From positions 57,363,210-57,427,209 of the forward strand of contig NC_068981.1 in NCBI RefSeq assembly GCF_001194135.2: DNA of 64,000 bases, given 5' to 3'. Below are positions 40,167 through 40,365 of the stretch, piece after piece (position 1 is the first letter of the stretch; every line of letters begins with the position of its first letter). Below the pieces are notes generated by a model. It did no database searches and was not told the origin of the DNA. It worked only from the letters and a program-made list of their open reading frames with translations. A program made the position numbers and the translations under genes. The DNA is from Octopus bimaculoides. Taxonomy: Eukaryota.

Positions 40167-40290
40167 GTACAAGCAATTTTACTAATATTTTTTTGTTGAC
40201 GTGTCTTCAAACTGATCACAATCGGCGAATTATTACGCCCTATTATTAAACGAAGAAAGCTCAGGAACTAAGTGAACAAAATCCTGTTCG
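40167..40290 (-). other. IRF: Putative non-coding first exon of the IRF gene (5' end approximate)
   Basis: Consensus donor GTAC|gtaagt at 40167/40166; CpG-containing, ATG-free, non-repetitive sequence; ISRE and GAS immediately upstream; exon 2 begins with an acceptor, so a 5' exon is required. Confidence 0.6.
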
Positions 40291-40310
40291 TCAGTTCTAT
40301 TTATGAAAAC

Positions 40311-40365
40311 AGTTTCAGTTTCACATCGTTTTCCCCGAATTCGAAAACGCTCCACTTTCTATGAA
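40311..40365. promoter_or_regulatory. ISRE plus two GAS-type elements (candidate IRF promoter module)
   Basis: AGTTTCAGTTTCAC (40311-40324; consensus AGTTTCNNTTTCNC), TTCCCCGAA (40331-40339) and TTCTATGAA (40357-40365; consensus TTCN3GAA). Confidence 0.7.

What the first reader, a model, noticed from the sequence alone, without database searches (positions are those of the whole stretch)
40167..40365. ISRE + GAS promoter module on an invertebrate IRF: candidate interferon-like feed-forward circuit without interferon
Seen: within ~150-200 nt upstream of a consensus minus-strand donor (40167) lie a perfect ISRE (AGTTTCAGTTTCAC), then 6 nt away TTCCCCGAA (the same core as the human IRF1 promoter GAS), then a second TTCN3GAA. 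The sequence is unique and non-repetitive. Known: composite ISRE/GAS promoters define vertebrate IRF1/IRF9/STAT-type positive-feedback genes; molluscs have JAK/STAT, STING/TBK1 and IRFs and show poly(I:C)-induced ISG-like responses, but no interferon gene is recognised. Inference: this IRF is both a STAT target and an IRF target (auto- or cross-regulation). With the pLxIS-like switch it forms a coherent sensor -> kinase -> IRF -> secreted signal -> STAT -> IRF amplification loop, implying an unidentified cytokine upstream. Linking this exon to the IRF gene across ~11 kb is inferred, not shown.
Basis: partly seen in the sequence, partly recalled or inferred. Interest (0 to 1): 0.85.

Follow-up and report, generated by a model that had tools for sequence, protein, structure and literature searches.

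The report
Conserved STAT+IRF promoter on octopus IRF gene
About 11 kb upstream of an octopus interferon-regulatory-factor gene lies a compact promoter with a STAT site, an IRF site and a TATA box, kept at identical spacing in the distantly related Argonauta, so this immune gene is probably switched on by STAT and IRF signals as interferon-pathway genes are in vertebrates, though no transcript or binding data were available.

Summary
A perfect ISRE lies at 40311-40324. TTCCCCGAA lies 6 nt away at 40331-40339, and a second TTCN3GAA at 40357-40365. All sit 144-198 nt upstream of a minus-strand GTAAGT donor, in single-copy DNA of Octopus bimaculoides.

New evidence: the orthologous IRF gene of Argonauta hians carries the same layout 3.8 kb upstream of its ATG exon. 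The shared parts are GTGGGCGT, AAAGTG, AATTCGGGGAAA (12/12), an IRF core, a TATA box, ACACGTCA and a GTAAGT donor. They lie on one diagonal, and the GAS-to-IRF-core (23 nt) and GAS-to-TATA (35 nt) spacings are identical. The rest of the 10 kb upstream shows no detectable similarity except a shared SINE. This is a phylogenetic footprint of a real promoter and non-coding first exon (P about 3e-4).

The genome encodes a STAT and three IRFs.

Not shown: the 40167->29150 splice junction, the transcription start, factor binding, inducibility, or any cytokine. The second GAS is only partly conserved. No genome-wide regulon signal was found. Human IRF1 has a GAS but no ISRE, and an oyster interferon-like protein has been reported.

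Verdict: a real, conserved GAS+ISRE promoter, a new member of a known kind. The feed-forward loop remains inference.

The parts
40409..40416 (-). GTGGGCGT, a conserved GC-rich (EGR/KLF-like) block about 75 nt upstream of the GAS
   Evidence: Exact 8-mer shared with Argonauta L003 5875-5882 on the same diagonal as the GAS block (offset -24 vs -21). The factor assignment is inference.
40353..40365 (-). Distal GAS-like site TTCATAGAA (40365-40357) overlapping a conserved AAAGTG (40358-40353)
   Evidence: TTCN3GAA match. Argonauta reads TTCTGCGTA (8/9) with AAAGTG kept on the same diagonal (and sequence). Only partly conserved.
40330..40341 (-). Proximal GAS: AATTCGGGGAAA containing TTCGGGGAA (40339-40331). 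The plus strand reads TTTCCCCGAAT.
   Evidence: 12/12 identical in Argonauta L003 5953-5964. It matches the human IRF1 GAS TTTCCCCGAAA at 10/11 (PMC5985295).
40311..40324 (-). ISRE / tandem IRF site GTGAAACTGAAACT
   Evidence: The only match in the window. Argonauta has TAAACCGAAAGT, and its GAAA core lies exactly 23 nt from the GAS start as in Octopus.
40297..40305 (-). TATA-like box CATAAATAG
   Evidence: Read. Argonauta has TATAAAATAG. In both species the ATAAA starts 35 nt after the GAS start.
40167..40273 (-). Predicted non-coding exon 1 (about 107 nt), with an Inr-like TCACTTA whose A at 40273 lies 31-32 nt after the TATA
   Evidence: Inference from TATA spacing. The stretch contains no ATG, which is true of only 12% of 107-nt windows on this strand. 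No transcript data.
40197..40204 (-). ACACGTCA (TGACGTGT on the plus strand, a CRE/bZIP-like core) inside the predicted 5'UTR, followed by a conserved AAATATT
   Evidence: Exact 8-mer in Argonauta L003 6088-6095, 135 vs 137 nt from the GAS block.
40161..40166 (-). Splice donor GTAAGT after TAC
   Evidence: Argonauta has CAG|GTAAGT at L003 6190. GTAAGT occurs 15 times on this strand of the window, so alone it is weak evidence.
29151..40166 (-). Inferred intron 1 (about 11 kb). It holds an antisense reverse-transcriptase element, SINEs and two assembly gaps (35393-35620, 36886-36895).
   Evidence: The part 29133-34064 is colinear with O. sinensis at 90-94% identity.
29130..29152 (-). Acceptor (T-rich tract then AG at 29152-29151), an 18-nt 5'UTR remainder, and the ATG at 29132-29130
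   Evidence: The same structure is present in O. sinensis and Argonauta.
13877..29132 (-). Coding part of the IRF gene (371 aa, 9 coding exons; IRF DNA-binding domain plus IAD1)
   Evidence: tblastn of P0001 on the window. Pfam IRF 2.2e-27 and IRF-3 1.4e-14.
40460..40660 (.). SINE-like repeat bounding the promoter about 100 nt upstream of the distal GAS
   Evidence: Sequence. Part of it (40593-40642) matches SINE-like DNA elsewhere in L002. A different SINE family has copies in the window at 41141-41289, 45423-45589, 50432-50610 and 59738-59920.

Best explanation
Window 40167-40416 (minus strand) is the core promoter and non-coding first exon of the Octopus bimaculoides IAD1-type IRF gene, whose ATG lies 11 kb downstream. 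Directly upstream of a TATA box sit one high-affinity STAT site (TTCGGGGAA) and one tandem IRF site (GAAACTGAAACT), with a weaker upstream STAT/IRF half-site block. Most likely mechanism: an activated STAT dimer and activated IRF protein(s), either this gene's own product or one of the two paralogues, bind side by side within 45 nt of the TATA box and jointly raise transcription. The IRF gene would then be both a STAT target and an IRF target, giving auto- or cross-amplification. Shown: the motifs, their uniqueness, their conservation with fixed spacing in Argonauta, and the presence of STAT and IRF genes. Inferred: the transcription start, the splice to exon 2, which proteins bind, inducibility, and any cytokine upstream of STAT.
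For: Motifs verified and improbable by chance. The sequence is single copy in the genome. Genome-wide there are 87 GAS+ISRE pairs against 53 in the control. By my own estimate, about 5e-4 chance pairs would fall, in the right orientation, within 15 kb upstream of one of the three IRF genes.

The Argonauta orthologue has the same order and spacing. The best local match of the 57-nt Octopus module anywhere in 53.8 kb of L003 is at 5952-5994, on the gene strand, upstream of the ATG. Its score is 18; the null was 11.8 +/- 1.3 with a maximum of 17 in 300, and the best real background chunk scored 14. The reciprocal best hit of the Argonauta core in the whole window is 40341-40300.

Three exact blocks of at least 8 nt (GTGGGCGT, AATTCGGGGAAA, ACACGTCA) lie on one diagonal within 3 nt. 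This has P about 3e-4 under a Markov null, and only 1 of 394 real windows reaches it. The remaining 10 kb upstream has no blastn-level similarity other than SINEs, and the orthologous proteins are only about 50% identical.

A GTAAGT donor follows in both species. An acceptor just before the ATG is present in three species. Exon 1 has no ATG.

A STAT gene lies at C17:49.826-49.850 Mb (STAT_int 9.5e-11, STAT_alpha 5.9e-6, SH2 4.1e-8). There are three IRF genes. Of the first 30 genome-wide GAS+ISRE pairs, only this one has a TATA within 45 nt.

Molluscan and shrimp IRFs bind ISRE (PMC13524488). JAK/STAT and IRF genes are reported in a squid genome (PMC7665748).
Against: No transcript evidence could be reached, so the start site and the 40167->29150 junction are inferred. 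The donor's exon side (TAC) is non-consensus. GTAAGT is common (15 on this strand). The distal GAS is not a TTCN3GAA in Argonauta. The first GAAA of the ISRE is TAAA in Argonauta. The O. sinensis orthologous region lies beyond the 10 kb that could be fetched, and no decapodiform orthologue was found, so conservation rests on one species pair. There was no enrichment of the same module genome-wide. The other two IRF genes show no such pair within 10 kb upstream of their first DBD-coding exon. Binding specificity of octopus STAT and IRF is assumed from other animals.
Confidence: 0.62

Rival explanations
1. The block is a real conserved promoter of the IRF gene, but the 'GAS' and 'ISRE' are read by other factors, for example a Rel/NF-kB-type protein on GGGGAAA(TT) or unrelated factors on the GAAA repeats. 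In that case there is no STAT input or no IRF feedback.
For: The Argonauta sequence GGGAAATTAC is 9/10 to the GGGRNWYYCC kB consensus (sequence; the consensus is from general knowledge). No binding data exist. The distal GAS and the first GAAA are not strictly conserved.
Against: Both palindromic halves TTC...GAA are conserved inside a 12/12 block. The Octopus version GGGGAAAACG is a poor kB site. The AANNGAAA IRF core is exact in both species at identical spacing. STAT and IRF proteins are encoded in the genome.
Confidence: 0.17
2. The conserved block is a promoter or enhancer of another transcript (a non-coding RNA or an unannotated gene), or a distal enhancer. The IRF mRNA's first exon would then lie elsewhere in the 11-kb interval.
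For: The junction to exon 2 is not shown. The interval is long, holds assembly gaps and transposons, and GTAAGT is frequent.
Against: In both species the block is on the gene strand, upstream of the orthologous ATG exon, with TATA, a donor downstream and no other called gene in between. The ATG exon needs an upstream exon. The predicted exon has no ATG.
Confidence: 0.13
3. Chance co-occurrence of short AT-rich motifs in non-functional DNA, noticed only because an IRF gene is nearby.
For: TTCN3GAA is at chance density in the window. About 53 GAS+ISRE pairs are expected genome-wide from the control. A SINE family carries ISRE-like GAAACTGAAAG.
Against: Conservation with fixed spacing in Argonauta against a saturated background. 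Single copy and not SINE-derived. The composite with TATA and donor occurred in 0 of 400 random 10-kb strands.
Confidence: 0.03

Closest known systems
Human IRF1 promoter GAS (TTTCCCCGAAA), the STAT1-homodimer target
   Same: An IRF-family gene with a proximal TTCN3GAA site. The octopod site TTTCCCCGAAT is identical at 10/11 positions (PMC5985295).
   Different: Human IRF1 has a single GAS and no ISRE (PMC5985295). The octopus gene adds a perfect ISRE 6 nt away. The octopus protein has an IAD1 domain and is not an IRF1/2-type protein. Homology of the sites is untested and convergence is equally possible.
Vertebrate ISRE+GAS composite genes STAT1, STAT2 and IRF9 (positive-feedback amplifier of interferon signalling)
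   Same: ISRE and GAS close together in the proximal promoter of a gene encoding a transcription factor of the same pathway, allowing STAT and IRF inputs to co-operate or substitute for each other (PMC10287828).
   Different: In vertebrates the ISRE is read mainly by ISGF3 (STAT1-STAT2-IRF9) and IRF1, downstream of known interferons. Whether octopus has STAT2 or IRF9 counterparts was not tested. No cephalopod interferon is known (PMC7665748). The spacing here is very tight (6 nt), with TATA 6 nt after the ISRE.
Invertebrate interferon-like axes: shrimp IRF-Vago-JAK/STAT and oyster cGAS/STING-TBK1-IRF-CgIFNLP
   Same: They show that invertebrate IRFs bind ISRE and drive a secreted factor that activates JAK/STAT (PMC13524488, PMC8218723, bioRxiv 10.1101/2022.12.18.520954).
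   Different: Those studies concern trans-acting components and cytokine promoters. My searches found no description of a GAS+ISRE module on an invertebrate IRF gene. No Vago or CgIFNLP counterpart was looked for in octopus.
Vertebrate IRF7 promoter ISRE (auto-amplification of the IRF itself; recalled from general knowledge, not checked here)
   Same: An IAD1-type IRF whose own promoter carries an ISRE, so pathway activation raises the amount of the IRF.
   Different: The IRF7 ISRE is read by ISGF3 after interferon signalling.

Membership tests
ISRE / tandem IRF site (RNGAAANNGAAACT) | Sequence match to the consensus | tested here: met
   GTGAAACTGAAACT is 14/14 and the only hit in 64 kb even with one mismatch allowed.
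ISRE / tandem IRF site (RNGAAANNGAAACT) | Evolutionary conservation in the orthologous promoter | tested here: met
   Argonauta has TAAACCGAAAGT. The AANNGAAA core is exact and 23 nt from the GAS in both species, but the first GAAA is TAAA.
ISRE / tandem IRF site (RNGAAANNGAAACT) | Bound by IRF proteins and confers inducibility | not testable with these tools
   Needs EMSA, ChIP or a reporter. Three IRF genes exist in the genome, and mollusc IRFs bind ISRE in the literature (PMC13524488).
GAS (STAT dimer site TTCN3GAA) | Palindromic TTC/GAA half-sites with a 3-nt spacer | tested here: met
   TTCGGGGAA at 40339-40331 and TTCATAGAA at 40365-40357.
GAS (STAT dimer site TTCN3GAA) | Conservation of both half-sites in the orthologue | tested here: met
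   The proximal site lies within a 12/12 identical block. The distal site is not met: Argonauta reads TTCTGCGTA.
GAS (STAT dimer site TTCN3GAA) | A STAT protein is encoded by the organism | tested here: met
   C17:49.826-49.850 Mb on the minus strand has STAT_int 9.5e-11, STAT_alpha 5.9e-6 and an SH2 with GTFLLRFS 4.1e-8. The STAT_bind profile alone found nothing, as expected for a split-exon search.
GAS (STAT dimer site TTCN3GAA) | STAT binding and JAK-dependent induction | not testable with these tools
   Experimental.
Vertebrate-type ISRE+GAS composite feedback promoter | ISRE and GAS close together in the proximal promoter of a pathway transcription-factor gene | tested here: met
   The gap is 6 nt and TATA follows 6 nt after the ISRE. 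The gene encodes an IRF.
Vertebrate-type ISRE+GAS composite feedback promoter | Gene induced by a cytokine through JAK/STAT, and by its own pathway | not testable with these tools
   No expression data. No interferon homologue is known in cephalopods (PMC7665748).
Vertebrate-type ISRE+GAS composite feedback promoter | The same module is used on other pathway or effector genes (a regulon) | tested here: inconclusive
   87 pairs against 53 in the control, and 6 of the 87 belong to one tandem repeat. Only the IRF site has a TATA among the first 30. The two other IRF genes (10 kb upstream) and the STAT gene (6.5 kb upstream of its ATG exon) show none, but their promoters may lie further away.
IRF1/IRF2 subfamily (the name given by NCBI) | C-terminal IAD2 and no IAD1 (Pfam IRF-3) domain | tested here: not met
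   Pfam IRF-3 (IAD1) covers residues 224-337 at 1.4e-14. The C-terminus matches the IRF5 IAD structure 3dsh at 7.5e-5. The DBD is equally close to IRF3, IRF2, IRF1 and IRF4.
RNA polymerase II promoter with a non-coding first exon | TATA box, start-site context, donor, and a matching acceptor before the ATG | tested here: met
   CATAAATAG and TATAAAATAG conserved. Inr-like A lies 31-32 nt downstream. GTAAGT donors in both species. Acceptors in three species.
RNA polymerase II promoter with a non-coding first exon | Transcripts that start here and splice to exon 2 | not testable with these tools
   No transcript collection was reachable. Look-up of the window's own protein is withheld, and gene ranges on record start at the ATG.

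The most novel reading that the evidence does not exclude
Octopods run a cytokine-mediated, interferon-like amplification loop: nucleic-acid sensor, then TBK1-type kinase, then IRF, then an unidentified secreted factor, then JAK/STAT, then back onto this IRF promoter. The conserved 60-nt GAS+ISRE+TATA module is its read-out. If so, the module could serve as a reporter to purify the missing cephalopod 'interferon'. The near-identity of its GAS to the human IRF1 GAS would then reflect either deep ancestry or strict convergence of STAT-to-IRF wiring.
Probability: 0.3. Interest if true: 0.85.

Novelty: new member of a known kind. Interest (0 to 1): 0.6.

Why it matters
Cephalopods have RIG-I-like receptors, STING/TBK1, IRFs and JAK/STAT but no recognisable interferon. 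How the sensing arm is connected to the STAT arm is an open question (PMC7665748). A short, conserved promoter in which a STAT site and an IRF site sit side by side on an IRF gene is the first cis-regulatory hint in this lineage that the two arms converge on one gene. It also turns the question into experiments: a 100-nt reporter with separable GAS and ISRE mutations, and assays of conditioned haemolymph with JAK inhibitors. It is a clean example of phylogenetic footprinting between Octopus and Argonauta, useful for annotating cephalopod promoters. Separately, the NCBI name 'IRF1' is misleading for an IAD1-bearing factor.

Tried and rejected
1. O. sinensis conservation. The fetched locus L002 reaches only 10 kb upstream of the ATG, which equals window position about 34064 because of extra insertions. 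No ISRE lies in that stretch, so the orthologous promoter is out of reach. The genome search does not accept that locus.
2. Decapodiform or other orthologues. Three protein searches, including a profile search, found only O. bimaculoides, O. sinensis and Argonauta, then vertebrate IRFs matching the DBD only. Squid and cuttlefish conservation could not be tested.
3. Transcript evidence. The window's own protein is not on record for look-up. Gene ranges on record start at the ATG. No Logan transcript contigs were found.
4. Regulon scan. GAS-N2-15-GAAANNGAAACT gave 87 hits against 53 in the control, including a 6-copy 4.2-kb tandem repeat without ORFs. ISRE-N2-14-TATAAA gave 190 hits against 778 in the control, which is uninformative.
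5. Paralogue and STAT promoters. No adjacent pair lies within 10 kb upstream of the other two IRF genes, or within 6.5 kb upstream of the STAT ATG exon. This is not decisive, because their first exons may lie further upstream.
6. The STAT_bind Pfam profile against the genome found nothing. I treated this as a sensitivity failure, since STAT_int, STAT_alpha and SH2 exons were then found at one locus.
7. A second GAS+IRF-core pair at 28400-28380 looked like an intronic enhancer but lies in a SINE-like repeat, so it was rejected.
8. An NF-kB reading of GGGGAAA was considered. It fits Argonauta (9/10) but not Octopus, so it is kept only as a rival.
9. Literature searches for octopus IRF/ISRE and for invertebrate IRF promoters with STAT sites returned nothing relevant.

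Full report
WHERE AND WHAT. The window is Octopus bimaculoides chromosome C1:57363210-57427209. A 371-aa IRF gene lies on the minus strand, with nine coding exons between 29132 and 13877. NCBI names it 'interferon regulatory factor 1' (P0001). Pfam finds an IRF DNA-binding domain (residues 7-110, 2.2e-27) and an IRF-3/IAD1 domain (224-337, 1.4e-14). The C-terminus matches the IRF5 IAD structure. It is therefore an IAD1-type IRF, not an IRF1/2-type protein. The ATG (29132-29130) is preceded by 18 nt of 5'UTR and a strong acceptor (T-rich tract, AG at 29152-29151). O. sinensis and Argonauta hians have the same arrangement. All three genes therefore need an upstream non-coding exon.

THE OBSERVATION. 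On the gene strand the sequence reads in this order:
- TTCATAGAA (40365-40357)
- 17 nt
- TTCGGGGAA (40339-40331)
- 6 nt
- GTGAAACTGAAACT (40324-40311)
- 5 nt
- CATAAATAG (40305-40297)
- about 130 nt
- TAC|GTAAGT, with the exon ending at 40167

The ISRE is the only match in 64 kb even with one mismatch allowed (0.05 expected). TTCN3GAA alone is at chance density (18 found, 20.65 expected). A GAS followed within 3-12 nt by AAANNGAAA is expected in only about 0.5% of random 10-kb strands. With ATAAA and GTAAGT downstream it occurred in 0 of 400. The stretch 40280-40400 is single copy in the 2.34-Gb genome.

CONSERVATION, THE DECISIVE NEW EVIDENCE. The locus of the Argonauta hians orthologue is L003. 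Its gene is on the + strand, its ATG is at 10001, and its protein is about 50% identical to the octopus one. L003 contains TTCGGGGAA at 5955. Read in full, the region shows the same order:
- GTGGGCGT (5875-5882)
- AAAGTG (5936-5941)
- AATTCGGGGAAA (5953-5964, 12/12 identical)
- TAAACCGAAAGTG
- TATAAAATAG
- ACACGTCA (6088-6095)
- AAATATT
- CAG|GTAAGT (6190)

This block lies 3.8 kb upstream of the Argonauta ATG exon. In both species the distance from the GAS start to the GAAA core of the IRF site is 23 nt, and to the ATAAA of the TATA box 35 nt. The three exact blocks of at least 8 nt lie on one diagonal (offsets -24, -21, -23). That arrangement occurred in about 3e-4 of 3000 Markov-randomised sequences and in 1 of 394 real 311-nt windows of the octopus strand.

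The 57-nt Octopus module finds its best local match in the whole 53.8-kb Argonauta locus, either strand, at exactly this place. The score is 18. The null was 11.8 +/- 1.3 with a maximum of 17 in 300, and the best real background chunk scored 14. In the reverse direction, the Argonauta core finds its best hit in the 64-kb window at 40341-40300. Apart from a shared SINE, blastn finds nothing else in common between the two upstream regions. The neutral background is therefore saturated, and these blocks are footprints of constraint.

The distal GAS is only 8/9 in Argonauta (TTCTGCGTA), and the first GAAA of the ISRE is TAAA there. The firmly conserved units are the proximal GAS, one full IRF core (AANNGAAA), the TATA box, and two flanking blocks of unknown reader.

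PROMOTER ANATOMY (INFERRED). An Inr-like TCACTTA puts an A at 40273, 31-32 nt after the TATA. This gives a 107-nt exon 1 (40273-40167) that contains no ATG, true of only 12% of such windows. After splicing to 29150, the first ATG would be the IRF start codon. The donor alone is weak evidence, since GTAAGT occurs 15 times on this strand. Its recurrence downstream of the conserved block in both species adds weight.

The intron would be about 11 kb. It contains an antisense reverse-transcriptase element (RVT_1, 3.1e-18) that O. sinensis shares at 92% identity, SINEs, and two assembly gaps. A SINE-like repeat begins about 100 nt upstream of the distal GAS, so the proximal promoter is compact.

CAN THE SITES BE READ? 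The genome encodes three IRF genes: the window's gene, C10:54.17-54.19 Mb and C25:1.707-1.709 Mb. It also encodes at least one STAT, at C17:49.826-49.850 Mb. The STAT exons are colinear and match STAT_int (9.5e-11), STAT_alpha (5.9e-6) and an SH2 domain with GTFLLRFS (4.1e-8). Published work reports that oyster, scallop and shrimp IRFs bind ISRE, and that oyster CgIRF1 activates the promoter of the interferon-like protein CgIFNLP (PMC13524488). It also reports that the CgIFNLP receptor activates ISRE, STAT3 and GAS reporters (PMC8218723), and that shrimp has an IRF-Vago-JAK/STAT axis (bioRxiv 10.1101/2022.12.18.520954). The squid genome has JAK/STAT and IRF genes but no interferon homologue (PMC7665748). 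That invertebrate STATs prefer TTCN3GAA is general knowledge and was not tested here.

MOST LIKELY MECHANISM. An activated STAT dimer on TTCGGGGAA and IRF protein(s) on GAAACTGAAACT, side by side within 45 nt of the TATA box, jointly drive the IRF gene. The gene is then both a STAT target and an IRF target, by auto- or cross-regulation. I put this at about 0.6. That the block is a real promoter of this gene I put near 0.8. That the specific readers are STAT and IRF is less certain.

Three rivals remain:
- Other factors read the motifs. The Argonauta GGGAAATTAC is 9/10 to a kB site, but the Octopus version is poor.
- The block serves another transcript or is an enhancer.
- Chance, which the conservation now makes very unlikely.

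COMPARISON WITH WHAT IS KNOWN. The GAS is TTTCCCCGAAT against the human IRF1 GAS TTTCCCCGAAA. However, human IRF1 has a single GAS and no ISRE (PMC5985295). The vertebrate genes defined by close ISRE+GAS pairs and positive feedback are STAT1, STAT2 and IRF9 (PMC10287828). In function the octopus promoter resembles that composite class, and IRF7-type self-amplification. In membership it meets the sequence and proximity criteria. Induction and binding cannot be tested here. I found no paper describing such a module on an invertebrate IRF gene.

LIMITS AND NEGATIVE RESULTS.
- Genome-wide, GAS-N2-15-GAAANNGAAACT occurs 87 times against 53 for the reversed-pattern control. Six of the 87 belong to one 4.2-kb tandem repeat without ORFs.
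- Among the first 30 hits, only the IRF site has a TATA within 45 nt.
- An ISRE-TATA scan was uninformative.
- The other two IRF genes (10 kb upstream) and the STAT gene (6.5 kb upstream of its ATG exon) show no such pair, but their promoters may be further away.
- The O. sinensis promoter region and any squid or cuttlefish orthologue could not be reached.
- No transcript data were available.

VERDICT. The regulatory reading (STAT plus IRF input) is plausible and now directly testable. The 'interferon-like feed-forward loop with an unknown cytokine' remains an inference. This is a new member of a known kind of regulatory module, found in a lineage where it had not been described. Interest 0.6.

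Noticed in passing
window 30113-32269 (+), inside the inferred intron 1: Retrotransposon remnant antisense to the IRF gene, with gag-like and reverse-transcriptase ORFs (RVT_1, 3.1e-18). 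O. sinensis has it at the orthologous place at 92% identity over 2.8 kb, so the insertion predates the split of the two species.
   Followed up: partly
window 28380-28400 (-); L002 10731; L002 9061-9125: A second GAS+IRF-core pair (TTCATGGAAGAAAAACTGAAA) in the intron after coding exon 1 lies inside a SINE-like repeat. Copies of that repeat family elsewhere carry GGAAACTGAAAGAAG. An octopus SINE family thus spreads ISRE-like sequences through the genome, which raises the background for motif scans and might seed IRF-responsive elements.
   Followed up: partly
G000:C20:28170011-28199409 (L041): Six copies of TTCACAGAAATTATCAGAGAAACCGAAACT lie in a tandem repeat with a unit of about 4.2 kb (92% identity between units). 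No convincing ORF is present and the function is unknown.
   Followed up: partly
G000:C17:49826312-49850188 (-) (L044-L047, L010): A STAT gene of O. bimaculoides. The N-terminal exon reads MSLWIKTKQ...FPLEVR...WLECQDW (STAT_int). A STAT_alpha exon and an SH2 exon with GTFLLRFS follow. Its ATG exon also starts just after an acceptor, so its promoter lies further upstream.
   Followed up: partly
P0001 residues 345-355 (window about 13900-13990, minus strand): The C-terminal SIQMSxPDSxD is invariant in O. bimaculoides, O. sinensis and Argonauta. It is a pLxIS-like serine motif after the IAD1 domain, consistent with kinase-switched activation, and was not examined further.
   Followed up: no
window 40197-40204 and 40409-40416 (-): Two exact conserved 8-mers flank the module. 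ACACGTCA lies in the predicted 5'UTR (TGACGTGT on the other strand, CRE/bZIP-like). GTGGGCGT lies about 75 nt upstream of the GAS (EGR/KLF-like). What reads them is unknown.
   Followed up: partly
window 35393-35620, 36886-36895 (also 3424-4004, 5623-6055, 48020-48728, 51736-52214): Assembly gaps (runs of N). Two lie between the promoter and the ATG exon, so the 11-kb intron length is approximate.
   Followed up: yes
window 44477-44985 (-): Tc1/mariner-type transposase remnant (HTH_Tnp_Tc3_2, 9.2e-13) about 4 kb upstream of the promoter. No host gene was recognised anywhere in 40700-64000.
   Followed up: partly
P0001 / NCBI annotation: The gene is named 'interferon regulatory factor 1' in O. 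bimaculoides, O. sinensis and Argonauta, but it carries an IAD1 (IRF-3) domain. The name reflects DBD similarity only. No orthologue outside octopods was recovered by the word-based protein searches.
   Followed up: partly
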